Of a DNA stretch of 64,000 nucleotides, positions 12,029-33,178 are shown one piece after another. The stretch covers positions 1-64,000 of the IMG/VR virus record IMGVR_UViG_3300042879_006196, one strand, 5' to 3'. Both the position numbers and the translations under genes were made by a program. The notes under the pieces were generated by a model. It had not been told where the DNA came from, made no database searches, and saw nothing but the letters and a program-made list of their open reading frames with translations. Position 1 is the first letter of the stretch. Each line of letters opens with the position of its first letter.

Positions 12029-13171
12029 ATGAACAATAATTCAAACAATCAACGAAGTGCTCCATCTGCTAAAATTATTAGACTTGGTGAAGGAGCATTT
12101 ATCACTGTCGTTATGGATGGTGAATCTTTGACTTTAAGAGCATCTGACTCTCAAGAATCATTTGACAAAGCATTAGAGGCTTGCAAAGCTGAAGACTGGG
12201 ACTTGCTTTATACTTGCATGAGACCTGTGAAAAAATATGTCTCTGAAATCAAAGGTGTCGAAATTAATGAAAATGGTGTGTTTTACAATGGTGAAATTAT
12301 TAACAACACTTTGTCAAAGAGAATTTTGGACTTTGCATTGTCTGGTCTTGATTCAAAACCATTGTGTAAGTTTTTAGAAAAACTCATGAATAATCCTTCT
12401 AGAAGAGCAGTGAATGAGCTTTACACATTCTTGGAACATCAAAACCTACCAATCACTGATAATGGTAATTTTCTTGCCTATAAGGGTTTGCTTTCAAATT
12501 ATTACTCAATCACCTCTGGTAGTGCACAACTTATCCAAGGAACAGTTAAAAGTGGCAGTATTTACAATGGTATTGGTGAAGTCATTGAAATGAAGCGTAA
12601 TGATGTTGATGATGATAAAGACAGAGGTTGCTCTTATGGGCTACATGCTGGAACTATGGAATATGCAAGTGGTTTTGCACAAGGAAAATGCGTGATTGTT
12701 GAAATTAATCCTGCTGATGTTGTAAGCATTCCTGTAGATTGTAATTTCCAAAAGCTGAGAACATGTAAATATAAGGTGGTTGGAGAATACGAAGCACCTC
12801 TTGTTGAACCACTCTATGCATCAAATTGGATTGAAGATGATATTGGATGTGATTGCACAGATTGTGATTGTGTAGAAACTACTGAGACTACAGAAGCCTC
12901 TGAGATTACCTTAGACACATCTAGCAATCCAATTGAAGTTTTTGCATTCGATACACCTAATTCAAGCTGGATTGATTTTGTTGAATGGGGAGTGAATGAA
13001 GAACTAGATCGTGTATTATCGGTGGTGCTTGGAACTGGTGAATCAATGGATTTCATTCATGTCCCACTGTGGCAATTCAGTCAATTCCAGAAATCTGTTG
13101 AATCAGGACAATCTGCTGGTAAGTTTTTCCACCAATTTATCAAATCAGTGTATGAGCAAATTCAGTATTGA
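12029..13171 (+). CDS. rIIB: rIIB-like protein with C-terminal KTSC-like domain
   Basis: NPS..AV.ELY.FL....LPIT..G.FLAYK, EM.R..V..D....CS.GLH, V.INPADVVSIP.D....K.R.C.Y.V; tail SS.I....VP....F....SAGKFF...IK. Confidence 0.88.
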   Translation: MNNNSNNQRSAPSAKIIRLGEGAFITVVMDGESLTLRASDSQESFDKALEACKAEDWDLLYTCMRPVKKYVSEIKGVEINENGVFYNGEIINNTLSKRILDFALSGLDSKPLCKFLEKLMNNPSRRAVNELYTFLEHQNLPITDNGNFLAYKGLLSNYYSITSGSAQLIQGTVKSGSIYNGIGEVIEMKRNDVDDDKDRGCSYGLHAGTMEYASGFAQGKCVIVEINPADVVSIPVDCNFQKLRTCKYKVVGEYEAPLVEPLYASNWIEDDIGCDCTDCDCVETTETTEASEITLDTSSNPIEVFAFDTPNSSWIDFVEWGVNEELDRVLSVVLGTGESMDFIHVPLWQFSQFQKSVESGQSAGKFFHQFIKSVYEQIQY

Positions 13172-13235
13172 AAATGAAATCGGGCAAAATCTGCCCGATT
13201 TTTTCCAGCTTTAACATAACCTGATTATTATAGAT

Positions 13236-13628
13236 ATGAAAGAATTCGGAAGTTTAGTAAATTACATCAAAACTGTGGCTACCAAAGGTATGCCAGCACC
13301 CCAAGTGGGAATGGGCGCAACCCTTCTTTGCTACACAGATAGACACGCTTGCACTGTCACAAAAGTATTCGAATTGAATAAAAAACTTTATGTTGAGATA
13401 CAGCAAGATTTTGCCTTTCGTATAGATGGAAATGGCATGAGTGAATGTCAAAAATATGATTTCAAACCTAATCCAAATGGATGCACTTACACTTATAGAT
13501 GGTGTGAAAAAAAGCAAAGATGGCTTAAAGTGTTCTTCAACGAAGAAACTAACAGATACAATTTAATTCAAAATGCATTTGGTTTATCTATTGGTAAAAG
13601 AGATGAATATTATGATTTTTGTTTTTAA
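13236..13628 (+). CDS. Phage hypothetical protein
   Basis: ORF starts directly at the repeated promoter. Confidence 0.75.
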   Translation: MKEFGSLVNYIKTVATKGMPAPQVGMGATLLCYTDRHACTVTKVFELNKKLYVEIQQDFAFRIDGNGMSECQKYDFKPNPNGCTYTYRWCEKKQRWLKVFFNEETNRYNLIQNAFGLSIGKRDEYYDFCF

Positions 13629-13665
13629 TTTAGCGTATAATAGATTGTAATTGAAAATTAAATAT

Positions 13666-13963
13666 CGGGGTGTGGTGAAATCGGTAGACACAACAGACTT
13701 GAAGTAAATTTGAGTGCTTGCATGACCCTTTTAGTGCGAGTAGAACCAGTCAAACTCGGTGAAGGCTTTGAAATGCTAATACCGAGCCAAGCCTAGAAAT
13801 AGGAAGGTGTAGAGACTAGACGGCTGGGCGATAAAGGAAATAAAAAAATCGCAAGGTATAGTCCAGAGTACAAACAAGAAAAATCTTGGTGGTGAAAACC
13901 ATAGTGCTACGAAAATCTGTCGGTAGCAATACTGTGAGGGTTCAAGTCCCTCTGCCCCGACCA
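13666..13963 (+). tRNA. trnL: tRNA-Leu(UAA) interrupted by a group I intron (exons 13666-13700 and 13912-13963)
   Basis: Joined exons give the stem-loop ACAGA-CT-TAA-AA-TCTGT, a long variable arm, GGTTCAAGTCC T-arm and CCA end. Confidence 0.92.
13701..13911 (+). ncRNA. Group I intron (211 nt) in the tRNA-Leu anticodon
   Basis: Inserted after U34 and ends in G; P/Q/R/S-like elements AAACTCGGTGAA, AATACCGAGCC, GTGTAGAGACTAGACGG, AAGGTATAGTCC. Confidence 0.9.
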
Positions 13964-13967
13964 ATCA

Positions 13968-14042
13968 GGGCTTATAGCTTAATGGTAAAGCGCTCGGCTC
14001 ATAACCGAAGGAGTGTAGGTTCAATCCCTACTGAGCCCACCA
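13968..14042 (+). tRNA. tRNA with CAU anticodon (Ile2 or elongator Met)
   Basis: GGGCTTA/TGAGCCC acceptor stem, CTCATAA loop, GGTTCAATCC, CCA. Confidence 0.9.
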
Positions 14043-14111
14043 ATCACACAATCTTAATTCAATAATTTGCCCGATTTTTTCCAGATTTAACACAATCTGA
14101 TTATAATAAAA

Positions 14112-14477
14112 ATGACATTTTTTGAAAACTTAATGATAGCACATTTTATTGGAGATTGGATTCTCCAACCTTCATCAATGGGAATACAAAAATCTTCCAA
14201 TTGGAAAATTAGATTTTTGCATTGCTTAATTTACACCGCTTGTTTTTTCTGGCTTAACTGGATTGCCTGTTTGTGGATTTTTATAACCCATTTTATCATT
14301 GACTCGTATATGCCTCTATTTTGGTTTAGAAAATTAAGAGGTGATTTTAAAACCATTGAAGAATTTAAAACTTCTTTTAACACACCTGCTGGCTTTTTTA
14401 TAAATGTTGTACTTGATCAAATTTTTCACATTATCACATTTTTGCCTGTAATTTTGTCCGTAAATTACAATAAATAA
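14112..14477 (+). CDS. DUF3307-like membrane protein
   Basis: AHFIGDW.LQ, LHC.IY, THFIID, DQ.FH motifs. Confidence 0.8.
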   Translation: MTFFENLMIAHFIGDWILQPSSMGIQKSSNWKIRFLHCLIYTACFFWLNWIACLWIFITHFIIDSYMPLFWFRKLRGDFKTIEEFKTSFNTPAGFFINVVLDQIFHIITFLPVILSVNYNK

Positions 14478-17400: not shown

Positions 17401-18082
17401 TTGTGTGGAGATGTATGAGATTGAAAATCAGGTGTGGGATCAGGTGAGTGATCAGGTGGAGCATCAAGTGTGGTATCAAGTGGAGCATCCTTTGTATGCT
17501 CAGGCGAGGGATCAAGTGATGAACCAGGTGTGGCTCAAGGTGTTCAGATGATTAATACAGATTGTGTTGAGATATTTGAGATTGAAGATCAGGCGTTGGA
17601 TCAGGTGAGTGATCAGGTGGAGTGGGAGGTGTGGCATCATGTGGAATATAAGGTGTGGTATAATGTGAGTAATCAGGTGAAAAACCCAGTGTGGTTTAAG
17701 GTGTTCGTATGATTAATACAGATTGTGTGGATGTGAAGGTTGAGGATCAGATTTGGCGTCAGGTGAGTTATCAGGTGGAGTGGGATACGCGGCATCATGT
17801 GGAGGTGTGGTATAATGTGAGTAAGCAGGTGAAAAACCCAGTGTGGTTTAAGGTGTTCGTATGATTAATACAGATTGTGTGGGTGTGAAGGTTGAGGATC
17901 AGATTTGGTGTCAAGTGGAAAATCAGGTGGAGTGTCAGTTGTCGTACTGGGTATGTGATGAGGTGAGATTTGATGCGGTTGATACAGTTTGGCATGAAGT
18001 GGGGTATAAGTTGTATGATCACATGGTTTTTCCAGGTTTAACATTACCCGATTATACTGGATATGATTCAAAAAAAAGATGA
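14479..18082 (+). repeat. MINTDCV micro-ORF array, block 1 (22 units by manual count)
   Basis: Repeat (A/T)TGATTAATACAGATTGTGTG at 14479, 14642, 14806, 14987, 15168, 15316, 15504, 15650, 15787, 15948, 16099, 16284, 16495, 16571, 16726, 16842, 17015, 17191, 17387, 17548, 17709, 17861; each opens a QVW-rich ORF that ends in the next repeat, except the last (17861), which runs on into the rIIA promoter. Confidence 0.95.
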
Positions 18083-20204
18083 CTTTGTAATCGACATGAA
18101 TTCCTCATTTGCACAACGAAAGTTCTCAGTTAAAACTGAGAATCTTGCTCATTTGTTCGACATAATGAGAAATTACATTTACTCAAACAAAATTCTTGCA
18201 GTTATTAGAGAGTACTCTACAAATGCAATTGATGCAAACATAAAAAATAACTTTGCATCTAGACCAATTTCAATCACATTGCCTACGTACTTCGAACCTA
18301 CATTTTCTGTAAGAGACTATGGCGCAGGTTTGAGCGAAGAAGAAATTTTTGAAATTTATTCTAGTTATGGAGAATCCACTAAAAGAGAAAGCAATGAATA
18401 CATTGGTAATCTTGGTATTGGAAGCAAATCTGGCTTCGCTTATTCTGATTCATTTACCATTACTTCATTCCATAATGGAACAAAAAAAATCTATGAAGCT
18501 TTCATTGATGAATCACAAATTGGTACAATTGCAAAAATTCATGAAGAAAAAAATGACAGTGAAAGCGGATTGTTAATATCTATTTCTGTTAATAAAAATG
18601 ACATCAATTATTTCAAAATTGAAGCAGAAAAGTTTTTCATGTGGTGGGATGTTACACCTGAATTTATTGGTGTCCAACCTGATTTTATGTCTCAATTTTC
18701 AACATACAAAAATGAATATTCTTCTAGTATTTGTCAAATCTTTTCAAAAAGATATTCTGAAACTTCAATTTCAGTTAAAATGGGTAATATTCTTTATCCA
18801 GTTACAAATTTTGATAAAATTGATTGTGATTGGTTGAAAGGTTTGTCTGTTGTCATTAAAGTAGGGCTTGGAGAAGTAAGTCACTCCGCTTCAAGAGAAT
18901 CTCTTGAAATGAATAGTTTAACTGTAGATACAATTAATACATATCTTCAAAAAATAAGAGAGACACTTACAGCACATTTCCTGAAGCAAATTGATGATTG
19001 CAAAACACCTTGGGGCGCAATCATAGAATATCATAATATGTCTTTTTTCGCTCAACAAACGATTGGTAAAAAAATATCTTGGAAAGGTAAAACTCTATCA
19101 ACGCAGTTACCGTCTAGTTTTCAATATTGTTTCTTTGATACATACTACAAAAAATGGAAGAAAAATGTAACTGTTCGATACTCCGCTGGAGACAGTGTGG
19201 CTTTTATTTTGAATGATGGAGGTTTTCCAGCGTCACAAACTAGAGCAAGGCTTCTAGCCGCACGTGATAAACTCAACAAGACAAACCTTTACACAAGTAT
19301 CATTTACATAAAAGGTTCAATCTCAGACACAAATGATTTACTAAAAAGTGACGAATTGATTGGATCAAATTATGTCAAGCTTTCAACGGTATTAGCAATT
19401 CCTACTAAAAATAAAAGTAAAAAAGCTGTTGCTGGAAAGATTCTTGAATGGAATTCCACAACAACATTTCCATACTCTACTTGCTGGGACTCTGTAGATA
19501 TACCAGACAGTGATGAAGAAATGATTTATGTTGAGATTGAAAAATTTGTGCCTGTCATGAGCAATTTTAATAACAGTAGCCGAGCGAGGTTTTATGATCT
19601 TAAAAATTGTTTGAATTTGATTCGTGATGTGGATAATAAAGTTTTCAAAATTTACGGAGTAAAAGCTGGTCAAAAATTACCTAAAAATTTTATTAGTCTG
19701 CATGATTACATGGAAAGGATGATTGTAAAATTCATTAAAACAGACGATTTTGTTGATAGTTATGTTCAACATGCAATTAGTCAAGTTAATTTAAGAACAT
19801 CATTCTTGAGTAGTGCAAGAACTCTAATGCAAACATTTGATACTGATATAATGAACAAATTCAATGATGTAAAATGCGAAAAGCTCAAGGCAATGTTTTA
19901 CTTTACTAAGCCTATGATGAATAAATTTTATCATCTTTTGACGAACATAAAAAACATTTCATTTCATTTTCCTAAAATAACCACTGCCTTGTCAGAGTTG
20001 GATGATTTGAAAGACAAAAGATTACAAGTTTGGAATCAAAACAAAAATTATTGTTTGGAAAATTATCCAATGATTGAATTTCATTATTCTCCAAACACTA
20101 TGGCTTTGACAAAAATGTTTGAATATGTAAATTCAATTCACGCAACACAAAACACTGAGAGGCACAAAAAGCCAATCAAAATTTCATCAAAAATTAATGT
20201 TTGA
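18063..20204 (+). CDS. rIIA: rIIA-like protein (N-terminal GHKL ATPase)
   Basis: Y.NK..AVIRE...NA.DA, F.VRDYG.GLS, YG.STKR.SN..IG.LG.GSKS.FAYSDSF, S.SRESL. Confidence 0.9.
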   Translation: MIQKKDDFVIDMNSSFAQRKFSVKTENLAHLFDIMRNYIYSNKILAVIREYSTNAIDANIKNNFASRPISITLPTYFEPTFSVRDYGAGLSEEEIFEIYSSYGESTKRESNEYIGNLGIGSKSGFAYSDSFTITSFHNGTKKIYEAFIDESQIGTIAKIHEEKNDSESGLLISISVNKNDINYFKIEAEKFFMWWDVTPEFIGVQPDFMSQFSTYKNEYSSSICQIFSKRYSETSISVKMGNILYPVTNFDKIDCDWLKGLSVVIKVGLGEVSHSASRESLEMNSLTVDTINTYLQKIRETLTAHFLKQIDDCKTPWGAIIEYHNMSFFAQQTIGKKISWKGKTLSTQLPSSFQYCFFDTYYKKWKKNVTVRYSAGDSVAFILNDGGFPASQTRARLLAARDKLNKTNLYTSIIYIKGSISDTNDLLKSDELIGSNYVKLSTVLAIPTKNKSKKAVAGKILEWNSTTTFPYSTCWDSVDIPDSDEEMIYVEIEKFVPVMSNFNNSSRARFYDLKNCLNLIRDVDNKVFKIYGVKAGQKLPKNFISLHDYMERMIVKFIKTDDFVDSYVQHAISQVNLRTSFLSSARTLMQTFDTDIMNKFNDVKCEKLKAMFYFTKPMMNKFYHLLTNIKNISFHFPKITTALSELDDLKDKRLQVWNQNKNYCLENYPMIEFHYSPNTMALTKMFEYVNSIHATQNTERHKKPIKISSKINV

Positions 20205-22164: not shown

Positions 22165-25100
22165 ATGATCAACACAGATTGTGCGGAAGTAAATGAAAAA
22201 GTGAATCCTATACAGCATCATGCAATTAATCAAGTACAGTATGAATTGGAGATTGAAGTTTGGGATATGGTAAAATGTAAGGTATCAGGTGAGGTAAGTT
22301 GTCAGGTGTTCGATTGATTAATACAGATTGTGTGAAAGTGGAACATCCAGTGTGGACTCAAGTGCGAGATCAGCTGTTCTCTCAGGTGCAGTGGAAGGTG
22401 TGCCATAACGTGCTGACTCAGGTGGAGTGGAAGATGCATGATCAGGTGTGGTGGAAGGTGTTCGATTGATTAATACAGATTGTGTTAAGGTGTGGGAGAA
22501 AAAGGATAAGGTGAGGGGTCAGGTGTGTTATCAAGTGATGGGTCAGGTAGAAGATCAGGTGCATGGTCCTTTGTTTCGGGAAATGTGGTGGCAGGTGTGG
22601 TTTGAGGTTTTCAAATGATAAATACAGATTGTGTGAAGGTGAGGGAGAAAAAGATTCAGGAGTGCGATCAGGTGTATGAGCAGGTGTATGAGCAGGTGTA
22701 TTGTCAGGTGAGTAATCATGTGGAGTATCAGGTGTGGGAGCAGGTGTGGTGCAAGGTATGTAAAAAAGTGTGGTTTAAGGTCTATAATGATTAATACAGA
22801 TTGTGTGGAGGTGAGGGAGAAAAAGAATCAGGCGACTGAGCAGGTGTATGAGCAGGTGTGTGAGCAGGTGGGGTGGAATGTGGAGTATCAGGTGTGGGAG
22901 CAGGTAGAAGATCAGGTGTGGGATCGTTTGTTTTGGTACTCGCGCTTTGAGGTGTTCAAATGATTAATACAGATTGTGTGGTGAAGAAGCAGGTGTGGGA
23001 GTATGTAGAAAGTCAGGTGTTGTGGAAGGTGTATGATTGGGTGAGTGAGCAGGTGAATTGGCAAGTGGAGATTCAGTTGTGGGATAAGCTGTTTGCTCAG
23101 GAAAGACATCAGGTACGGCATCAGGTAAAAGTGAAGGTGTTCAAATGATTAATACAGATTGTGTGGAAGTTGAAAGCCATGTGAAGAATCAGGGGTTTGA
23201 TCAGGTGTGGAATCAGGTGGAACTTCAGGTGTGGGGTCAGGTGTGGGATTATTTGTGGTGGAAGGTGTGGCTTGAGGTGTTCGAATGATTAATACAGATT
23301 GTGTGTATGATTGGGTGAGTGGTGATTGGGTGAGTGATCAGGTGGAGCTTCATGTGAGGAATCAAGTGCGGGGTCAGGTGTGGGGTCAGGTGTGGGATAA
23401 GGTGCGGGATCAGGTGGAGTATCAGGTGTGGGAGCAGGTGTGGTTTGAGGTGCTCAGATGATTAATACAGATTGTGTGGAAGATCAGGTGGAGTATCAGG
23501 TGGAGTATCAGGTGGAGCTTCAGAAGTGGGGTCAGGTGTGGGATGAGGTGTGGTGGAAGGTGTGGCTTGAGGTAAGTGATCAAGTAAGGGATCAGGTGTT
23601 TTATAAGGTGTGGTTTGAGGTGTTCTATGATTAATACAGATTATGTGGTAAATAAGCAGGTGTGGTGGCATGCAGAAGATCAGGTGTTTTCGAATATGCG
23701 TGATTGGGTGTGGTGGCATGTAGAAGATCAGGTGTATGATCAGGTAAGGATATTGGTGCAGATTCATGTGTGGGATCAGGTGGGGGGTCAGGTGTATGAC
23801 CAGGTGTTCTATGATTAATACAGATTGTGTGAAGGTAAAGAAGCAGGTGTGGGAGCATGTAGAAAATCAGGTGTGGTTTGAGGTGTATGATTGGGTGAGT
23901 GAGCAGGTGAATTGGCAAGTGGAGATTCAGTTGTGGGATGAGGTGTTGTATCAGGTGTTGTGGATTAAGGTGTTTAGATGATTAATACAGATTGTGTGAA
24001 GATAAAAAATCAAATGTATGATCAGGTGGAGTGGAAGGTGTATGATCAGGAGTGGTGGTATCGGGTGAGCATTCTAGTGTTGGATCAGTTGGAGTATAAG
24101 GTGTGTAATCAGGTGTGGTGGGAGGTGTATAAGGGTGTGTGGCAGGTGTTAAAATGATTAATACAGATTGTGTGGAAGATCAGGTGTGGGATCAGGTGGA
24201 GCTTCAGGTGTGTAATCATGTGTGGTATCATGTGAGGTATCAGGCGTCTCAGCAGTTGGGGGTTAAGGTGAGAGGTCAGGTGAAATACAAGGTGAGGTAT
24301 CATGTGAGAGATCAAGTGGTGTGTGAGGTGTGGTATGATTAATACAGATTGTGTCAAGGTGAGGGAGCAAGATAAGGTGTGGGATCAGGTGTGGTGGAAG
24401 GTGCTCAAATGATTAAAACAGATATTGTGAAAGTGAAACGTGAAAATCAAATGTGTTTTAAGATTTATCACAATTTGGAACAACAAGTGCACTGGAATAT
24501 ACTTTATCTGGTGAAAGCTCAAACGAAAAATAGACTTTTTGCACAGAAGAATCTGCTGGGTAGGATTGTAGATCGCGAGATCAAAAGGCGCTCAAATGAT
24601 TAATACAGATTGTGTGGTTGTGTGGAATCAGGTGAGACATCAGGTACGGCATCAGGTAAAAGTGAAGGTGTTCAAATGATTAATACAGATTGTGTGGAGG
24701 TATGTGAGATTAATCATGTATGGACTCAGGTGAATTATAAGGTGACACATCAGGTGAAGAGAGTGGCATCTCAGGTTCACTCTGAGGTGAGACATCAGGT
24801 ACGGCATCAGGTGTGGTGTGAGGTAGAGGATCAGGTGGAGTGGAATGTGTGGAATAAGGTGCTGGGTCAGGTGTGGAATCAGGTGAGGATTCAGGTGTGG
24901 TATGATTAATACAGATTGTGTGGAAGATCAGGTGTGGGATCAGGTGGAGCTTCAGGTGTGTAATCAGGTGAGGTATCAGGTGAGGTATCAGGTGAGGGTT
25001 CAGGTGTGTGATAAGGTGAGGGGGAGGTGGTGCTACGTAAGAGTGAAGGTGTTGTTTAAGGTGTTCAGATGATTAATACAGATTGTGTGGAAGATCAGGT

Positions 25101-27430
25101 GTGGGATCAGGTGGAGCTTCAGGTGTGTAATCAGGCGAGGTATCAGGTGAGGTATCAGGTGAGGGAGGAGGTGTCTGATAAGGTGAGGGGTCAGGTGAGA
25201 TATAAGGTGAGGCATCATGTGAGAGATCAGGTGGTGTGTGAGGTGTTCTATGATTAATACAGATTGTGTAAAGGTGAGGGAGCAAGATAAGGTGTGGAAT
25301 CAGGTGCAGGATCATGTGTGGTTTGAGTTGTGGTATAAGGTGCGGGATCAGGTGAAGATTGAGGTGAGGTTTCAGGTGTGGGTTCAGGTGTTCAAATGAT
25401 AAATACAGATTGTGTGGAAGTGGAAGATGATTCAAATTTGACTAAAATGAAACATGTGTTGACTCATGTGCGCGATAGGGTGGAGGTTAGGGTGTGGTTT
25501 GCGGTGTCGGCTCTTGTGGAATGTCGGTATTGGTATGAAGTAAGAGATAATGTGTTCTAATGATTAATACAGATTGTGTGGAAGTGAAACATCCAGTGTG
25601 GGGTGAGGTGAGGGAACAGGCAAGGGTTACAATAGTTTATCATTTGTGGCATCAGGTGTGGTACCAGGTTGCGTGGGATGTAGAGGATCAGGTGTTGGAT
25701 CAGGTGTGGAATCAGGTGTTCTAATGATTAATACAGATTGTGTGGTAGCGAAGAATCTGGTGCGGAATCAAATGAGGAATCATGTACAGTATCAGGTGCA
25801 GACTCAGGTGTATGAAAAGGTAGATTATCAGGTGTGGGATAAGGTGCGATGGAAGGTGTATGCTCAGGTGCGGGATAAGGTGTTTAGATGATTAATACAG
25901 ATTGTGTGGAAGTGAGGGAGCGGGATCAGGCGTGGAAAAAAGTGCAGAATCATGTGTGGAATCAGGTGCAGGATCATGTGTGGTTTGAGTTGTGGTATAA
26001 GGTGCGGGATCAGGTGAAGATTGAGGTGTGGAATAGGGTGTGGTGGAAGGTGTTCAAATGATAAATACAGATTGTGTGAAAGATCAGGTGTGGAATCAGG
26101 TGTGGAATAAGGTGTTGAATCAGGCGTGGGGTCAGGTGGAGTATCAGGTGGAGATTCAGGTGTGGGATCAGGTATGGATTCAGGTATGGAAGGTGTGTTG
26201 TAAAATACAGAATCAGGTGTGGCATGATTAATACAGATTGTGTGGATGTATGTGATAATAATTATCAGTTTTGGTATGTAGTGTCTCAGGTTCAGGTTGA
26301 GGCAAATCAGGTGGAGATTCAGGTGTTTAGACAAGTGAGGAAACTAACGTGGGCTCAGGTAAGATATCAGGTGACACACAAGGTAATTGATCAGGTGTGG
26401 TATGATTAATACAGATTGTGTGAAAGATCAGGTGTGGAATAAGGCGCTGGATCAGAAGTGGGGTCAGGTGAGGAAACAGGTGTGTGAGCATGTATGGGAT
26501 CAGGTGTGGAATAAGGTGTGGGATCGTTTGTTTTGGGTAAGATTCAAGGTGAAGTATCAGGTGTGGCATGATTAATACAGATTGTGTGAAAGTGAGTGAG
26601 TGTGATAAGGTGCAGGATCAGGTGAGACAGCAGATGCGGGATCAGGTGAAAGATCAGGCGTTGAAGGGGTTTATTCAGGTATATTGGCAGGTGAGTAATC
26701 AGGTGGAGTATAAGGTGTGGGAGAAGGTGATCAAACAGGTACGACTTCAGGTGTGGTATGATTAATACAGATTGTGTGAAAGAGCAGGTGTGGAATAAGG
26801 TGCTGGGTCAGGTGAGATACAAGGTGAGGTATCAGGTAGAGGATAAGGTGGAGTGGAAGGTGTTAAATCAGGTATATGATAAGGTGTTTAAATTGAATTA
26901 TAAGGTGTTGAAAAAGGTGTTCAGATGATTAATACAGATTGTATAGAGATATTTGAGATTGAAGATCAGGCGTTGGATCAGGTGAGTGATCAGGTGGAGA
27001 TGGAGGTGAGGTATCAGGTGAGATATAAGGTGAGGCATCATGTGAGAGATCAGGTGTGGTGTGAGGTGTTCTATGATTAATACAGATTGTATAGAGATAT
27101 TTGAGATTGAAGATCAGGCGTTGGATCAGGTGAGTGATCAGGTGGAGATGGAGGTGTGGCATCATGTGTTGGATCAAGTTGTGGGTGAGGTGTGGTATCA
27201 GGTGTGGTATCAGGTGAATTATCAGGTGTGGTATGATTAATACAGATTGTGTGAAAGTGAAACGTGAAGATCAATTGTGTTTTAAGATTTATTATAATTT
27301 CGATCATAAAATGCACTGGGAGATGATGTATCAAGCGCATTACAAACCCCAATATCAAGCAGAATATTATTTATGCTGTAATATTTACAATAAAGGATGG
27401 AAGCAGATAACAGAGCAGATATTCAAATGA
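22165..27430 (+). repeat. MINTDCV micro-ORF array, block 2 (32 units by manual count)
   Basis: Repeats from 22165 to 27233 at about 75-230 bp spacing; first ATG lies directly behind the promoter at about 22126-22160. Confidence 0.95.
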
Positions 27431-27968
27431 TGAATCACTTCAAAGATTCCTTTTTTATGAAACATCCCACTGGACTCCGCGACAAAAAATGATCCCTCTT
27501 TAATGCAGAATAAAACACCTTTTCATCACCCTTTTTGTACCCCACACCTGACCAAAAACAAGGCTTCACACACACTAATTTATATGCCTTTCTGTTCATT
27601 TTTTACTCTATGAATTCCTATATGAACACACAATCTGAAACACGATCTCTATATCCCTAATACAATTAAGATACAATTAAAAAATCACATATTCATTATG
27701 CATTTTTTTCACCTTCCACCACCTCAAATGATAAAAAAAAAATTACACAAGATATATATGATTTTTTTCAATTTTTTCTACTCTATGAAAAATTAATGAG
27801 ATTTTTTGTCAAATCATTTTTCATCTCTGAAAAAATCATATCATTTTCTCTTTCTATTTTTTTCTGATTTTCGCCCGATTTTTCCTCATCAATTTTGCCC
27901 GATTTTTTCCAGTTTTAACATTTTCTTTTTATAATGTTTCCAAGACAAATTTCGTAGAATGTAGTGGT

Positions 27969-30900
27969 ATGATTAATATACATAATGTAGAATTGAATGA
28001 CAAGGATTACATAAAAATAAAAGATTTCATTTCTTCCCATGTAAATGAAAATGTCTGGTTTCGTGTGAATGATCAAGTGAGGAAATATTTCTGCCATAAA
28101 CACAGAGGTAAAATTTATAAGAGGATGTTCAAATGATTAATATAGATTGTGTGAAGGTATTTGATATGAAACAGGTGTGGGATGAGCTGACTTTTCAAGT
28201 GAGTGATCCAGTGGATAAGCATGTGCTGTCTGACGTGTGGTATCAAGTGAGGGATAAGGTGTGGATTCAGGTACGATTTAAGGTGTGGATTAGGGTGTTG
28301 TTATGGTTAATACAGATTGTGTGAAGGTGAGGGTGCTGAATCAGGTGAGTGATCAGGTGCGGGATCAAGTGAACTATCCAGAGGCAAATCATGTGCTGTC
28401 TGACGTGTGGCATCAAGTGAGGGATCAGGTGTGGATTCAGGTACGATTTAAGGTGTGGATTAGGGTGTTATGGTTAATACAGATTGTGTGAAGGTATTTA
28501 ACCTAATACAAGCGTGGGATGAACTAACAACTTATCAGGTAAGGTATTCAGTGAAATATCATGTGCTGCATAATCTCTGGTATGAAGTGGGGGCTGGGGT
28601 GAAGATTGAGGTGAGGCATAAGGTGTGGTTTGATTAATACAGATTGTTTGAAGTAAAAGTGATTAGATATCAGGTAAGTGATAAGTTGTGGGAGTTGGTG
28701 ATCAGACAGGTATGGAATCAGGTGAGGTATAATGGTCGGTGGCATCAGGTAGAGGGGAGGGTGCGGGATCGGTTGTTCAAATGATTAATACAGATTGTGT
28801 GGAAGTGAATTATAGGGGGTGGATTCAGGTACGATTTAAGGTGTGGTTTGAGGTGAGAGATCGGGTGTGGCTTGAGGTAAGTGAACATCCAGTGTGGAGT
28901 CAAATTTTTTTCCATCAGGTGTTTGAAAAGGTGGAGTGCGAAGTGTGGTATGATTAATATAGATTATGTGAGGGTGAGGAATCAGGTGGGTGAGCAGGTG
29001 AGCTGTCAGGTGTGGAATCAGGTGTTTGAGCATTTAGAAGATCAGGTAGAGTATCAAGTGTATAATCAGATTTTGTCTGAGTTGCATGATCAGTTGTATT
29101 ATAAGGACTGGGAGGTGTGTTATAAAATACGGCAAAAGGTGTGGTATGATTAATACAGATTGTGTGAAAGTGGAGAATCATGGTTGTTGGCAGTTTAGGG
29201 ATCAGGTGTGGTATCAAGTGGAGCAACAGGTGTGGCACAAGGTGTCTAATGGGGTTCGGGATAGGGTGTGGATTAAGGTGTTCAGATGATTAATACAGAT
29301 TGTGTGAAGGTATTTGAACTAAATCAATTGTGGAATCAAGTGAGTGATCAGGTGGAGTGGAAGGTGCGTGATGAGGTAGAGTATAAGGTGTGGCTTCAGG
29401 TAAGATACAAGGTGTGGGATCAGGTGCAGTTTTGGGTAAGATTCAAGGTGAAGTATCAGGTGTGGCATGATTAATACAGATTGTGTGGAAGTGAAACATC
29501 CAGTGTGGACTCAGGTGCAGAATCAGGTATATTGGCAGGTGAGTAAACAGGCATGTCATAAGGTGGAGTGGAAGGTGTGGCATAAGGTGTGTAGTGGGGT
29601 GCGGGAATGGGTTGTGTATCAGGTGTGGGATCGGGTTGTGTATCTAACGTTAAATGATTAATACAGATTGCGTGAAGGTATGTGAGATTAATCATGTATG
29701 GACTCAGGTGAATTATAAGGTGACACATCAGGTGAAAAGAGTGGCATCTCAGGTTCGCTTTGAGGTGATGAGTCAGGTGTGGGATCAGGTGTATTGGATG
29801 ATGTGGCAAAAGGTGGTGTGGTATGATTAATACAGATTGTGTGGAAGTGGAACATAAAGTGTTGGAGACGATGTGGTATCATATGTGGGAAAAGGTGTGC
29901 TATGGGCTGATATTTCAGGTATGTAGTGAAGTGAGGCTTAAAGTGAGGCTTAAGGTTTTTGTTTGAGGTGTGGTATGATTAATACAGATTGTGTGGAGAT
30001 GGTGCGTCCAGTGTGGACTCAGGTTCGAAATCAACTGTTTACTCAGGTGCAGAATCAGGTAGATCATAAGGTGAGGGCTCAGGTGTTCTTGAACGTGTGG
30101 TCTAAGGTGTGGGATCAGGGGTGGTATCAGGCGTGGGATAAGGTGATAAATGATTAATACAGATTTTGTGGAAGTGAAAAATCAAATGTGGGGTGAGGTG
30201 AGGGATCATGCGTGGTTGAAGGTGTGGTATCTGGCGAGGAATCAGGTGAGGAACCAGGTAAATGATCAGGTAAGTGGTGAGGTGATTAGTCTGCTTGTGT
30301 ATCAGGTGTGGCATCAGGTGTTGTATCAGTTGACTGATATGGTTTGGAATAAGGTGATAAATGATTAATACAGATTGTGTGGAAGTGAAAAATCATCCAC
30401 ATATGCAGGTAAGACAGCAGATGAGACACAGGGCGTGGTTTCAGGTGTGGAATCAGTTGGTTCCTATGGTTTGTGATCATGTGTGGAAGCACATGTATAT
30501 TCAGGTGCAAATTCAAGTGTTGGATAAAGTGATGTATGGATTGTATGAAGAAGGTGAACAATCAGGTGTGGCATGATTAATACAGATTATGTGGGCTTAC
30601 TCGGAGCGGCAAAAACTCAGGCTCAAAATGAAATTAACAGTATTGTGCAACTTGAAGTGTGGGAGAAGGTGATCAGTCAGGCATGGCTTAACACGTGGCA
30701 AAAGGTGTGGTATGATTAATACAGATTGTGTGAAAGTGGGGAATCCAGTGGGGAATCAGTTGGGGTTTGAGGTGAATTTTCAGGCGAGGTGGCAAGTGAT
30801 GTCTCATGTGGAATATGTGGTGCGGCATGATGTGAGGGATCAGCTGGAGTGCAAAGTTTGGTATATGTGGTGGAAGGTGTGCAAATGATTAATACAGATT

Positions 30901-33178
30901 GTGTGAAAGTGGAAAATCAAGTGTTTAATGAGGTGCAGAATCAGGTGTGGTGGAAGGTACATGCTCAGGTGTTCCGTAAGCTGAGAGGTAAGGAATGGTT
31001 GGCTGAGTTGTGGCAACAGAAAACATATGTTGTCACGTATCAGAATCAGGTTCTACTTAAAGTAAAACTTCAGGTGTGGTATGATTAATACAGATTGTGT
31101 GGAATTGTATAATGAGGTTTCGAATCAAGTGAGGGATCAGGCGTGGGCTCATGGACTTCAGGCGTGGTGGCAAGTGAGGAATAAGATAAGGTATCAGCCT
31201 TGGCATCAAATTAGTAGGAAGGTGAGAAAACAGGTATGGTATGAGGTGTGGTATGATTAATACAGATTGTGTGAAAGTGTATAATGAGGTGCAGAATCAA
31301 GTGAGGGATCATGTGTGGATTAATACAGATTGTGTTAATACAGATTATGTTGAATTGTATTATGAGGTTTCGATTCAAGTGAGGGATCAGGTGTGGTATC
31401 AGGCGTGGGATAAGGTTTGGGATCAAGTGAGGAATAAGATGAAGTATCAGGCTTGGCATCAAATTAGTAGGAAGGTTAGAAAACAGGTATGGTTTGAGGT
31501 GTAGTATGATTAATACAGATTTTGTGAAAGTGGAAATTTGGGTGTGGGATCAGCTAAAGAATCATGTGAAAAATGAATTTAGTAGTGAAGTGTGGCAACA
31601 GGTAAATGTTAGGATGTGCGATCAGGTGTGGGAGAAGGTGATCAGACAGGTACGATATAAGGTGTGGTATGATTAATACAGATTGTGTGAAGATATATAA
31701 TAGTAAAAATCCAATGATTGATCATATGTGGGATCTAGTGACAACCCAATCGTTTTATGAGTTTTTGAATTATGTGCTTTTCAAGGTAAAGAGACAGATA
31801 TGGAATAAGGTGTGGCTTGAGGTGTTCAAATGATTAATACAGATTGTGTGGAATTGAGCCATCACGCGCTGGATCAAGTGAGCAACAATACGCGGTATCA
31901 GCTGGAGTGGAAGGTATGGGCTCATGTGGATCATGCGGTAAAACAGATTGGTTTGCCGTTTAAGGTAAAGTTGCAGGTATGGAATAAGGTGATAAATGAT
32001 TAATACAGATTGTGTAAGGAATAAGATGAAGCAGAAGCACTTGGATTTTAGACATCAAACGCAAAAGTATGTATGGGCTAACTTTATATTAGGGCTTGAG
32101 TATCGTGTGAGACTTAATGTCTGTAGTAAGCTTACGAGTCAGATATATTATCAGGTGAGTGTATATATTTATAATAAGGTGTATGATGATTAATACAGAT
32201 TGTGTGCAGATAAATGATGATGAATATCAGGTAAAAAGTCAGAAGTATAAACATATATCTAATGAGATGTATCTTGAGGTGTGGTATGAGATGTCTCAAA
32301 AAGTATTATATTTTTCTGTGCGTGAGTTGTGCATTAAGGTGTTTAGATGATTAAAATAGATTGTGTGGAGATTAAGGTTCAACATCACATTTGTCTTGTG
32401 CACATTCATGTTTCTAATCAGGCTTATCAGGTGTGGGACAAGAATTGTAAAGGAGTGTGTTTTCCAAGGCGTCAGTTGTGGTTTGAGGTGTTTAGATGAT
32501 TAAAACAAATTGTGTGGAGATTAAGGTTCAAGATCAGATTTGGTTTGTGGATCATTATTTGTCCAATGAAATGTGGTGTCAGGCTTTGAACAATACAGTG
32601 CTTTGGGCAATTCCTAATGTGGTAATTTATAATGTGCGCGATAAAGCTTGGATCAAGGTGTTTAGATGATTAACACAGATTGTGTGAGAGTGGACAGTCT
32701 TGAAATAAAGCATGAAGTTGTTTTTGAGATGAGGAATAAAGTGTGGAATCAAATATATTATCATGTGTCTTGTAAGGTTTGGAGGCTGGTAAAGCTTCAG
32801 GTGTTTGGGTGTTCAGATGATTAATACAGATCGTGTGGATTTGAAAAATCATGATAATCTACATTATCATCTTACTAATTCACCAAGATGGTATGTGTGG
32901 GATCAAATTAATCTTCAAGTGAGGAATCATGTTTCTAAGGTAAGGTTTAAGTTGTGGGATGAGATGTTAAAATGATTAATACAGACTGTGTGAATATAAG
33001 GAATGGTGAAAAAATCCAAATGGATTTGCAGAACCATGTGGATATAGTTGATATCCATTCTGTTCGAAATTCTATTTATTATCAAGTAAGAAGATTAAGT
33101 AATGTAACTTTGATAAGATATAAATTACAAAAGATTTTTTTTGATTATTTGTCTTATGATTTATGTGGGATATTGTGA
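27969..33178 (+). repeat. MINTDCV micro-ORF array, block 3 (30 units by manual count)
   Basis: Repeats from 27969 to 32972; promoter at about 27903-27935; first and last units are the most diverged. Confidence 0.95.

What the first reader, a model, noticed from the sequence alone, without database searches (positions are those of the whole stretch)
13666..13963. Phage tRNA-Leu(UAA) carrying a self-splicing group I intron
Seen: a 211-nt insertion after U34, ending in G, with P/Q/R/S-like core elements and no ORF. Established: this is the insertion site of the trnL(UAA) intron of cyanobacteria and plastids, whereas phage group I introns are mostly known from protein genes. tRNA finders will miss or mis-call this gene. 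Inference: it may indicate host lineage or act as a vehicle for intron spread. An unspliced anticodon loop could also be shielded from host anticodon nucleases.
Basis: partly seen in the sequence, partly recalled or inferred. Interest (0 to 1): 0.7.

Follow-up and report, generated by a model that had tools for sequence, protein, structure and literature searches.

The report
Phage tRNA-Leu split by group I intron
A 347-kb lake-water jumbo phage carries a leucine tRNA gene interrupted in its anticodon loop by a 211-base self-splicing-type (group I) intron, a kind of intron that reviews say had been seen in phages only inside protein genes, and the same arrangement turns out to be common but unannotated in other phages.

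Summary
Window 13666-13963 (+) is a type II tRNA-Leu(UAA) gene. A 211-nt ORF-less group I intron (13701-13911) sits between U34 and A35.

Evidence:
- ARAGORN in intron mode calls exactly these coordinates.
- Rfam Intron_gpI matches at 38.3 bits (E 2e-8), below its gathering score of 50. Homologous introns score 49-96.
- In 26 homologues, RNAalifold and my pair counts recover P1-P9 and the tRNA stems. 48 of 61 predicted pairs show compensatory changes.
- The U·G pair at the 5' splice site and the terminal G are invariant.
- Metagenome relatives 91-93% identical in the flanks carry the same tRNA uninterrupted, joined exactly at 13700|13912.

Splicing itself is not shown. RNA libraries hold only unspliced forms.

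The feature is not unique. Agrobacterium phage Atu_ph07 (not annotated there), megaphage LR756501 and at least 62 IMG/VR contigs have it, and some introns carry HNH endonuclease ORFs. The nearest cellular relatives sampled are alphaproteobacterial, not cyanobacterial, so the intron gives no cyanobacterial host signal. Shielding from anticodon nucleases has no support.

I rate it a new member of a known kind, in a setting I found unreported.

The parts
13666..13963 (+). Split tRNA-Leu(UAA) gene: 87-nt type II tRNA with encoded CCA, plus a 211-nt intron
   Evidence: ARAGORN -i. The in-silico spliced product folds as a canonical tRNA-Leu(taa) cloverleaf with a 5-bp variable arm and A73.
13666..13700 (+). 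5' exon: acceptor 5' strand 13666-13672, D arm, anticodon stem 5' strand 13693-13697, C32 U33 U34 (U34 = 13700)
   Evidence: Acceptor and anticodon stems covary across 26 homologues.
13701..13911 (+). Group I intron, IC3-like, ORF-less, ending in omega-G 13911
   Evidence: RF00028 38.3 bits, E 2.4e-8. Covariation. Exactly this stretch is absent in relatives.
13697..13715 (+). P1: exon ACUU 13697-13700 pairs with intron GAGU 13712-15; the 5' splice-site wobble is U13700·G13712
   Evidence: The U·G and the two adjacent exon-side pairs are 26/26; the outermost, A13697-U13715, is 22/26. Rfam alignment.
13717..13740 (+). P2 (13717-22 / 13735-40) with an unusual 12-nt loop (13723-34) where all 25 homologues have a GAAA tetraloop
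   Evidence: Alignment A2. P2 pairs covary. MFE fold.
13746..13827 (+). P3 (13746-51 / 13822-27), enclosing P4-P6 and the 5' strand of P7
   Evidence: All six pairs have compensatory changes (columns 86-91 / 280-285).
13755..13786 (+). P4 (13755-61 / 13780-86) and P5 (13764-66 / 13775-77)
   Evidence: columns 95-106 / 139-150. Also in the MFE fold.
13792..13803 (+). P6 hairpin CCUA-GAAA-UAGG
13812..13864 (+). P7 pseudoknot: G13812 and GACU 13814-17 pair with AGUC 13860-63 and C13864. This is the guanosine-binding helix. A13813 is bulged.
   Evidence: Four of the five pairs are kept in 26/26 and U13817-A13860 in 25/26; two positions show compensatory changes.
13828..13852 (+). P8 (13828-32 / 13848-52). 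It lacks the CCUAA..UAUGG receptor motif present in most homologues.
13867..13908 (+). P9 (13867-71 / 13904-08), enclosing hairpins P9a (13875-79 / 13884-88) and P9b (13889-93 / 13898-13902, GAAA loop)
   Evidence: P9 and P9b covary. P9a is seen only in the single-sequence fold.
13912..13963 (+). 3' exon: A35 A36 (13912-13), anticodon stem 3' strand 13916-20, variable arm, T arm 13936-52, acceptor 3' strand 13953-59, A73, CCA
13968..14042 (+). Adjacent tRNA-Met(CAU), 4 nt downstream. It is syntenic in all relatives, with or without the intron.

Best explanation
Window 13666-13963 is a functional phage tRNA-Leu(UAA) gene interrupted between U34 and A35 by a small ORF-less group I intron of the IC3-like type found in bacterial tRNA genes.

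Inferred mechanism, which follows from the group I family:
1. The pre-tRNA is transcribed.
2. The intron folds into P1-P9.
3. A free guanosine bound in P7 attacks after U13700, which sits in the U13700·G13712 wobble of P1.
4. The freed 3'-OH of U34 then attacks after omega-G 13911. This joins the exons into an 87-nt type II tRNA that reads UUA/UUG.

These two codons make up 63% of leucine codons in this phage's long ORFs, and the phage has no other tRNA for them.

The intron itself is best seen as a selfish element. It is now immobile, having no endonuclease gene. It belongs to a lineage that circulates among phage tRNA(UAA) genes and is gained or lost precisely between closely related strains.

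Shown here: gene and intron boundaries, conserved and covarying structure, presence/absence polymorphism, transcription of the unspliced form, and distribution in other phages. Inferred: catalytic activity and aminoacylation.
For: - Boundaries: ARAGORN -i. Relatives from JGI lake metagenomes, 91-93% identical in the flanks, carry the same 87-nt tRNA uninterrupted, with the BLAST pieces abutting at 13700|13912. The 99%-identical contigs L283 and L291 carry the identical intron. A Logan contig in run X15 shows the same 211-nt skip.
- Structure: RF00028 E 2.4e-8. RNAalifold on 26 homologues recovers P2, P3, P4, P5, P6, P8, P9, P9b and three tRNA stems, with 48 of 61 pairs compensated. P1, with an invariant U·G, and the P7 pseudoknot hold in 25-26 of 26 sequences for every pair but the outermost P1 exon pair (22/26). 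The terminal G is invariant. MFE z = -3.6.
- Homologues pass Rfam's curated cut-off: 52-57 bits in three phage genomes, and 51-88 bits in the best-scoring bacterial hits.
- tRNA: canonical cloverleaf after in-silico splicing. TTA is 41.6% and TTG 21.0% of Leu codons, and the only other phage tRNA-Leu has anticodon UAG.
- Expression: in lake and soil RNA libraries, contigs 95-98% identical cover only 13645-13961. Depth is zero on 11.2-13.6 kb and on 13.97-17.1 kb. Three contigs end at the tRNA 3' end.
- Lineage: the same split gene is in Atu_ph07, LR756501 and 62 IMG/VR contigs. Two long introns carry HNH ORFs, one over Pfam's cut-off.
Against: - No spliced junction was seen in any library that is certainly RNA. 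Only unspliced forms appear, although standard RNA-seq rarely captures mature tRNAs and Logan contigs drop rare forms.
- The Rfam score is below the gathering threshold.
- This copy sits on a long branch.
- Alone among the 26 aligned sequences, it lacks both the L2 GAAA tetraloop and the CCUAA..UAUGG receptor motif in P8. In the related Azoarcus ribozyme these form a stabilising tertiary contact (my own knowledge).
- The first tRNA pair is C1-G72, which is unusual for a bacterial-type tRNA.
Confidence: 0.8

Rival explanations
1. The intron is real but decayed. This copy no longer splices, or splices too poorly to matter, so the gene is effectively a tRNA pseudogene carried neutrally.
For: - Only unspliced RNA was seen.
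- RF00028 scores 38.3 bits, below the cut-off, against 49-96 for the other phage copies.
- Long branch.
- The L2 tetraloop and the P8 receptor motif are both lost.
- Intron-less alleles of the same tRNA exist in co-occurring strains.
Against: - Every core helix and the splice-site determinants are intact.
- The exons keep a perfect cloverleaf.
- The intron is identical in two independent 99% contigs.
- It is the phage's only tRNA for its commonest Leu codons.
- L2 (CCUUU 13727-31) and L8 (AAAGG 13833-37) are complementary and could replace the lost contact. This is inference, and such a match could arise by chance.
Confidence: 0.13
2. The intron is kept because it benefits the phage. It might delay or gate maturation of the tRNA, or keep a precursor pool whose anticodon loop is not yet formed and so cannot be cut by host anticodon nucleases. 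The second is the reader's idea.
For: - Unspliced, end-trimmed precursor is abundant enough to assemble in several metatranscriptomes.
- The arrangement recurs in many phages whose terminases show no detectable similarity to this one's.
Against:
- Close relatives do without the intron, which fits neutrality.
- The mature spliced tRNA would be as exposed as any other tRNA.
- I know of no defence nuclease reported to target tRNA-Leu(UAA) specifically (own knowledge).
- A literature search pairing group I introns with anticodon nucleases found nothing relevant.
Confidence: 0.05
3. The region is not phage DNA. It is host chromosome at the edge of a 'provirus' call, so this is an ordinary bacterial split tRNA.
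For: IMG/VR classes the record as a provirus, and the gene lies 13.6 kb from the record's left end.
Against: - Flanking genes are phage-typical and co-oriented: eIF-like PHROG, DNA ligase, NAMPT, PRPP synthase, Mom, rIIB-like 12029-13171, rIIA-like 18063-20204.
- CheckV completeness is 99%, and 23 further tRNAs, TerL and other phage genes lie elsewhere in the record.
Confidence: 0.02

Closest known systems
Group I intron of cyanobacterial and plastid tRNA-Leu(UAA) genes (Kuhsel 1990; Xu 1990; as cited in PMC3984707 and PMC4033280)
   Same: Same gene, same insertion point (U34|A35), same overall architecture (P1-P9, no ORF), and the anticodon stem closes the intron. Two cyanobacterial examples fetched here (L245, L246) align throughout.
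   Different: Only 52-55% identical over 196-197 core columns. The cyanobacterial pair forms a separate long branch. Host genome is a phage. L2 and P8 differ.
Alphaproteobacterial chromosomal tRNA-Leu(UAA) introns (found here in Rhodobacteraceae-, Rhodospirillaceae- and Rhizobiaceae-labelled genomes)
   Same: Same site and size (204-251 nt). These are the closest cellular relatives sampled (59-67% identity). One of them (L171) has an ordinary chromosomal setting of ABC transporter and oxidoreductase genes.
   Different: Cellular, not viral. In my trees the viral introns form their own cluster beside or within them. I do not know whether these alphaproteobacterial Leu introns have been described. 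The reviews I read name only tRNA-Arg(CCU) and tRNA-Ile for proteobacteria.
Azoarcus tRNA-Ile(CAU) and Agrobacterium tRNA-Arg(CCU) IC3 introns (Reinhold-Hurek & Shub 1992; cited in PMC4033280)
   Same: Small (about 200 nt) ORF-less introns in bacterial tRNA anticodon loops, with GAAA tetraloops and the same core sequence motifs (own knowledge of the Azoarcus sequence). tRNA-Arg(CCU) introns were recovered here in 9 Rhizobiaceae-family genomes.
   Different: Different tRNA and a different insertion position in the loop.
Phage group I introns in protein-coding genes (T4 td/nrdB/nrdD, SPO1, Twort; Jug phages, PMC12880540; pelagiphage capsid genes seen here)
   Same: Same class of ribozyme in phage genomes. 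The introns splitting the capsid genes of pelagiphage HTVC120P and phage KT997847 share 85-91% identity with the window's P4-P7 core over about 75 nt.
   Different: Those interrupt ORFs. This one interrupts a tRNA, which a 2014 review states had not been observed in phages.

Membership tests
Group I intron (Rfam RF00028; IC3-like) | 5' splice site follows a U that forms a U·G wobble in P1 | tested here: met
   U13700·G13712. The wobble is kept in 26/26 homologues.
Group I intron (Rfam RF00028; IC3-like) | Intron ends in G (omega-G) | tested here: met
   G13911. The column is invariant in alignment A2.
Group I intron (Rfam RF00028; IC3-like) | Conserved core helices P3-P8, including the P3/P7 pseudoknot, supported by covariation | tested here: met
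   RNAalifold: 48 of 61 pairs compensated. P7 pairs are 25-26 of 26, with two compensatory changes.
Group I intron (Rfam RF00028; IC3-like) | Score at or above Rfam's curated gathering threshold (50 bits) | tested here: not met
   38.3 bits, E 2.4e-8. Homologous introns at the same site score 48.9-56.6 in other phages (a second, unplaced intron in LR756501 scores 96.1) and 33.7-87.7 in bacteria.
Group I intron (Rfam RF00028; IC3-like) | Precise removal: an allele or product lacking exactly the intron | tested here: met
   DNA alleles L286, L288-L290 and L292, and the X15 contig, join 13700 to 13912. These are most likely DNA, not spliced RNA.
Group I intron (Rfam RF00028; IC3-like) | Guanosine-dependent self-splicing | not testable with these tools
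   Needs an in vitro assay. RNA libraries showed only unspliced forms.
Cyanobacterial/plastid trnL(UAA) intron lineage | Insertion between U34 and A35 of tRNA-Leu(UAA) | tested here: met
Cyanobacterial/plastid trnL(UAA) intron lineage | Groups with cyanobacterial/plastid introns by sequence | tested here: not met
   52-55% identity. It clusters with viral introns, then alphaproteobacterial ones. Only two cyanobacterial references and no plastid were used, so the test is weak.
Bacterial type II tRNA-Leu | Cloverleaf with long variable arm, A73 discriminator, Leu anticodon | tested here: met
   ARAGORN on the in-silico spliced 87-mer.
Bacterial type II tRNA-Leu | Charged by leucyl-tRNA synthetase | not testable with these tools
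   -
Mobile group I intron with homing endonuclease | Endonuclease ORF inside the intron | tested here: not met
   No ORF with any Pfam match. The related viral intron L043 (704 nt) has a 151-aa HNH ORF at 23.9 bits against a cut-off of 21.4. L261 has a weaker one at 18.3 bits.
Mobile group I intron with homing endonuclease | Presence/absence polymorphism among close relatives | tested here: met
   Intron-plus and intron-minus alleles occur in the same JGI data set (Ga0315901: L283 against L292).

The most novel reading that the evidence does not exclude
Group I introns in phage tRNA genes are a widespread and so far unrecognised class. The picture would be a phage-borne lineage that targets the anticodon loop of tRNA(UAA) genes. 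It moves between unrelated phages and between type II and compact type I tRNA bodies, sometimes with an HNH endonuclease. It also exchanges with bacterial chromosomes. Phages would then be the long-sought vehicle for the sporadic, horizontally patterned distribution of trnL(UAA) introns in bacteria.
Probability: 0.35. Interest if true: 0.75.

Novelty: new member of a known kind. Interest (0 to 1): 0.62.

Why it matters
- A 2014 review of bacterial group I introns states that all phage introns seen to date lie in protein genes, despite the many phage tRNA genes (PMC3984707). A 2014 tRNA review lists group I tRNA introns only for cyanobacteria, alpha- and beta-proteobacteria and plastids (PMC4033280). 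Ten full-text searches found no later report for phages. This locus and its many relatives fill that gap.
- Annotation pipelines miss these genes, so phage tRNA repertoires and codon-usage arguments are incomplete. In this phage the missed tRNA serves 63% of leucine codons. In cultured phage Atu_ph07 a 'hypothetical protein' is annotated over part of the gene.
- Atu_ph07 grows on a tractable host, so splicing, fitness effects and mobility can be tested directly.
- Phage-borne copies bear on the old debate over whether the trnL(UAA) intron is ancient and vertical or horizontally mobile.

Tried and rejected
- Rfam at gathering threshold gave no intron hit. The match appears only with the E-value threshold.
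- Promoter and terminator scan of 13200-14400 gave nothing above the shuffle expectation. A TATAAT at 13636-41 is visible, but I make no claim from it.
- The search for related loci with the upstream ORF in IMG/VR found no relatives. The metagenome scan succeeded.
Of 120 stretches, 118 were chance matches and only 2 were split tRNA-Leu genes, so it gives no census.
- TerL of this phage found no match at E <= 1e-5 in five other intron-bearing phage genomes. Its best match among cultured phages is 27% identity. Host and phage family therefore remain unknown. The empty result had no positive control.
- The spliced junction was sought in 8 RNA-labelled runs (two of them, X16 and X25, look like one data set filed twice). 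It was seen only in X15, which is probably DNA and 6% diverged, so I read it as an intron-less allele and not as a spliced product.
- I did not build a custom covariance model. The alignment exceeds 400 columns, and a model of about 290 positions would exceed the calibration limit.
- I did not use the count of structure pairs, because it needs a 535-character typed structure. I counted pairs by script instead.
- Co-conversion signal: the three exon differences between intron-plus and intron-minus alleles all lie in the 3' exon, but at about the flank divergence rate. I claim no signal.
- The anticodon-nuclease shielding idea found no support in the literature and no testable signal in the sequence.

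Full report
**What is there**

The window is the first 64 kb of a 347,392-bp IMG/VR virus record with CheckV completeness of 99%. Around the finding lie co-oriented phage genes. They include a translation-factor-like PHROG, an ATP-dependent DNA ligase, NAMPT, PRPP synthase and a Mom-family protein. An rIIB-like gene sits at 12029-13171 and an rIIA-like gene at 18063-20204. A large terminase, helicases, RecJ and GroEL lie further on. The DNA recurs at 98-99% of sampled words in 14 lake-water metagenome runs.

At 13666-13963 the sequence reads as a tRNA whose anticodon loop is broken after ...GACUU by 211 nt ending in G. It resumes with AAAAUCUGU. Default ARAGORN and the Rfam tRNA model do not see the gene.

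Joined in silico, the exons give an 87-nt type II tRNA. It has a 7-bp acceptor stem, a 5-bp variable arm with a GCAA loop, A73 and an encoded CCA.

**Is it a group I intron?**

- Rfam's Intron_gpI model matches 13691-13878 at 38.3 bits, E 2.4e-8. This is under the curated 50-bit threshold. It is the only such match in the genome.
- The intron alone folds at z = -3.6 against shuffles. The fold shows the hairpins expected for P2, P3, P4, P5, P6, P8, P9a and P9b.
- I aligned 26 homologous split genes: 22 from phage records or viral contigs, two from alphaproteobacterial MAGs and two from cyanobacteria.
- On that alignment RNAalifold recovers the acceptor, anticodon and T stems. It also recovers P2, P3, P4, P5, P6, P8, P9 and P9b. 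Of 61 pairs, 48 keep pairing through changes on both sides.
- RNAalifold cannot draw P1 or the P7 pseudoknot, so I counted them by script.
  - The splice-site wobble U13700·G13712 is kept in 26/26 sequences.
  - The P7 pairs GACU 13814-17 / AGUC 13860-63 and G13812-C13864 are kept in 25-26 of 26, with compensatory changes at two positions.
- The last intron base is G in every sequence.
- No ORF with any Pfam match lies in the intron.

**Independent proof of the boundaries**

I searched JGI metagenomes with the small ORF just upstream (13236-13628). This returned ten contigs of close relatives.

- Two contigs, 99% identical, carry the identical 298-nt split gene.
- Five contigs, 91-93% identical in the flanks, carry the same 87-nt tRNA-Leu(UAA) uninterrupted. 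It is followed by the same tRNA-Met. The two BLAST pieces abut so that exactly 13701-13911 is missing.
- Three contigs have a different 88-nt tRNA-Leu(UAA) at the locus.
- Intron-plus and intron-minus forms come from the same data set (Ga0315901).
- A Logan contig in run X15 shows the same 211-nt skip. That library is probably DNA and the contig is 6% diverged, so I read it as the intron-less allele and not as spliced RNA.

**Expression**

Contigs 95-98% identical to the window appear in five distinct RNA libraries: X16 (filed again as X25), X18, X19 and X20 from lake water, and X17, an oligo-dT soil library. They lie only on 13645-13961.

- Some cross the 5' splice site and some the 3' splice site, all unspliced.
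- Three end at 13961, inside the CCA.
- Depth is zero over 11.2-13.6 kb and over 13.97-17.1 kb, including the adjacent tRNA-Met.

This argues for a transcribed, fairly stable precursor or intron-3'-exon species rather than DNA carry-over. It gives no evidence of the spliced product. Mature tRNAs are poorly captured by such libraries, so the absence is uninformative.

**How it most likely works**

By homology, guanosine bound at P7 attacks after U34. The freed exon then attacks after omega-G 13911. This yields the tRNA that reads UUA and UUG. TTA and TTG make up 41.6% and 21.0% of leucine codons in the phage's 167 ORFs of 200 aa or more. The only other phage tRNA-Leu has anticodon UAG. The tRNA therefore has a clear use.

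The intron looks like a selfish passenger. It has no endonuclease gene and close relatives do without it.

One peculiarity stands out. All 25 other sequences have a GAAA tetraloop on P2, and most have a CCUAA..UAUGG motif in P8. The window's intron lacks both. In the Azoarcus ribozyme these make a tertiary contact (my own knowledge). Instead its 12-nt L2 contains CCUUU (13727-31), which is complementary to AAAGG (13833-37) in L8. A loop-loop contact may have replaced the tetraloop-receptor pair. This is inference only, and five complementary bases in two A/U-rich loops could be chance. The change, the long branch and the sub-threshold Rfam score leave about a one-in-eight chance that this copy splices poorly or not at all.

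**Distribution**

- BLAST against GenBank phages found the same split tRNA-Leu(UAA) in two genomes.
  - Agrobacterium phage Atu_ph07 has a 278-nt intron. The gene is not annotated there, and a 'hypothetical protein' CDS overlaps its 3' part.
  - The 735-kb uncultured phage LR756501 has a 205-nt intron.
- A stringent pattern found 62 IMG/VR contigs, several of them 160-676 kb.
- In four of these genomes the tRNA intron is the only group I hit, or one of two. It scores 49-57 bits.
- The window's TerL finds no match in five of them (no positive control).
- Two long introns carry HNH ORFs: L043 over Pfam's cut-off and L261 under it.
- Many viral contigs carry the same intron in compact 74-77-nt tRNAs with anticodon UAA, a 5-nt variable loop, G1·U72 and A73. 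In intron trees these interleave with the type II genes. Either the intron has moved between tRNA bodies or the bodies have been exchanged.

**Cellular relatives**

- Two alphaproteobacterial MAG contigs have the split gene, one of them (L171) in an ordinary chromosomal setting.
- Among 151 genomes sampled from the family of each of two alphaproteobacterial MAGs, labelled Rhodobacteraceae and Rhizobiaceae in their record titles, 10 and 20 have group I hits.
- All of these hits lie in tRNA genes. About half are tRNA-Leu(UAA). In the second family, 9 are the known tRNA-Arg(CCU) intron.
- Over 196-197 core columns the window's intron shows these identities:
  - up to 76% to viral copies;
  - 59-67% to the alphaproteobacterial ones;
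  - 52-55% to two cyanobacterial ones.
- When the tree is rooted on the cyanobacterial pair, the viral introns cluster together next to alphaproteobacterial lineages.
- Caveats apply. The viral set was collected with a sequence pattern, the alignment is short, supports are FastTree local values, and the root rests on two sequences.

The intron therefore does not point to a cyanobacterial host, and the host remains unknown.

**Literature**

A 2014 review says all phage introns observed to date are in protein-coding genes despite the many phage tRNA genes (PMC3984707). A 2014 tRNA review lists group I tRNA introns only for cyanobacteria, alpha- and beta-proteobacteria and plastids (PMC4033280). 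Recent work on intron-rich jumbo and crAss-like phages again reports protein genes only. Ten full-text searches found no report of a group I intron in a phage tRNA gene. Subscription journals are not covered, so prior description cannot be excluded.

**Verdict**

Catalysis is still to be shown. In mechanism it is a new member of a well-known kind. The setting, a phage tRNA gene, and its breadth across phage metagenomes appear to be unreported. They are directly testable in a cultured phage.

Noticed in passing
window 22600-31500: GC skew of about 0.5 and no ORF of 160 aa or more. The stretch holds dozens of arrays of a 12-nt unit, GATCAGGTGTGG or GATCAGGTGAGG (DQVW / DQVR if read in frame). 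These are nested in higher-order units of 148-190 nt, several of which contain ATGATTAATACAGATTGTGTGAA or a close variant. It looks like a tandem family of small repeat-protein genes.
   Followed up: partly
IMG/VR loci, e.g. L013:5025-5295, L016:10032-10307(-), L017:8269-8602, L028:685-965, L058:1378-1648(-): Compact type I tRNAs (74-77 nt, 5-nt variable loop, G1·U72, A73) with anticodon UAA carry the same phage-type group I intron. Bacterial tRNA-Leu is normally type II, so their amino-acid identity is open. ARAGORN mis-calls several as tRNA-Phe(gaa) by taking the intron's last G as nucleotide 34.
   Followed up: partly
L284, L285, L287 (3420-3507), against window 13666-13963: In some close relatives of this phage the same locus, between the upstream ORF and tRNA-Met, holds a quite different 88-nt intron-less tRNA-Leu(UAA). 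The locus is therefore a hot spot for tRNA replacement.
   Followed up: partly
window 13917 (also 13922, 13934): The intron-plus allele has C13917, giving a G-C pair in the anticodon stem. Intron-less alleles have T there, giving G·U. That pair is G-C in all 26 intron-bearing genes aligned. This may reflect a splicing or homing-site constraint.
   Followed up: no
L001:1495-1856 (Atu_ph07, MF403008.1 ~112890-113251, minus strand): The GenBank record of this cultured jumbo phage does not annotate the split tRNA-Leu(UAA). CDS AUZ94936.1 ('hypothetical protein') overlaps its 3' end.
   Followed up: yes
L003:1501-1576 and L004:1501-1578: The capsid genes of uncultured phage KT997847 and pelagiphage HTVC120P are annotated as two CDS pieces. 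A gap of about 190 nt between them holds a group I core 85-91% identical to window 13750-13825. These are probably unannotated introns in the major capsid gene.
   Followed up: no
L278:4178-4740: This viral contig has, besides its split tRNA(UAA), a second tRNA-like gene with an insertion of about 476 nt. ARAGORN calls it 'Asn gtt', which is probably a mis-call.
   Followed up: no
L304-L317, L293-L302 (alphaproteobacterial genomes): Chromosomal tRNA-Leu(UAA) group I introns occur in roughly 6% of sampled genomes of two alphaproteobacterial families. In the same sample the known tRNA-Arg(CCU) intron occurs too, along with single calls in Thr(CGU), Arg(ACG) and Asn(GUU), which may be ARAGORN mis-calls.
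   Followed up: partly
LR756501.1 718159-718390 (minus strand): The 735-kb phage has a second, stronger group I intron hit (96.1 bits) elsewhere in its genome. Its host gene was not examined.
   Followed up: no
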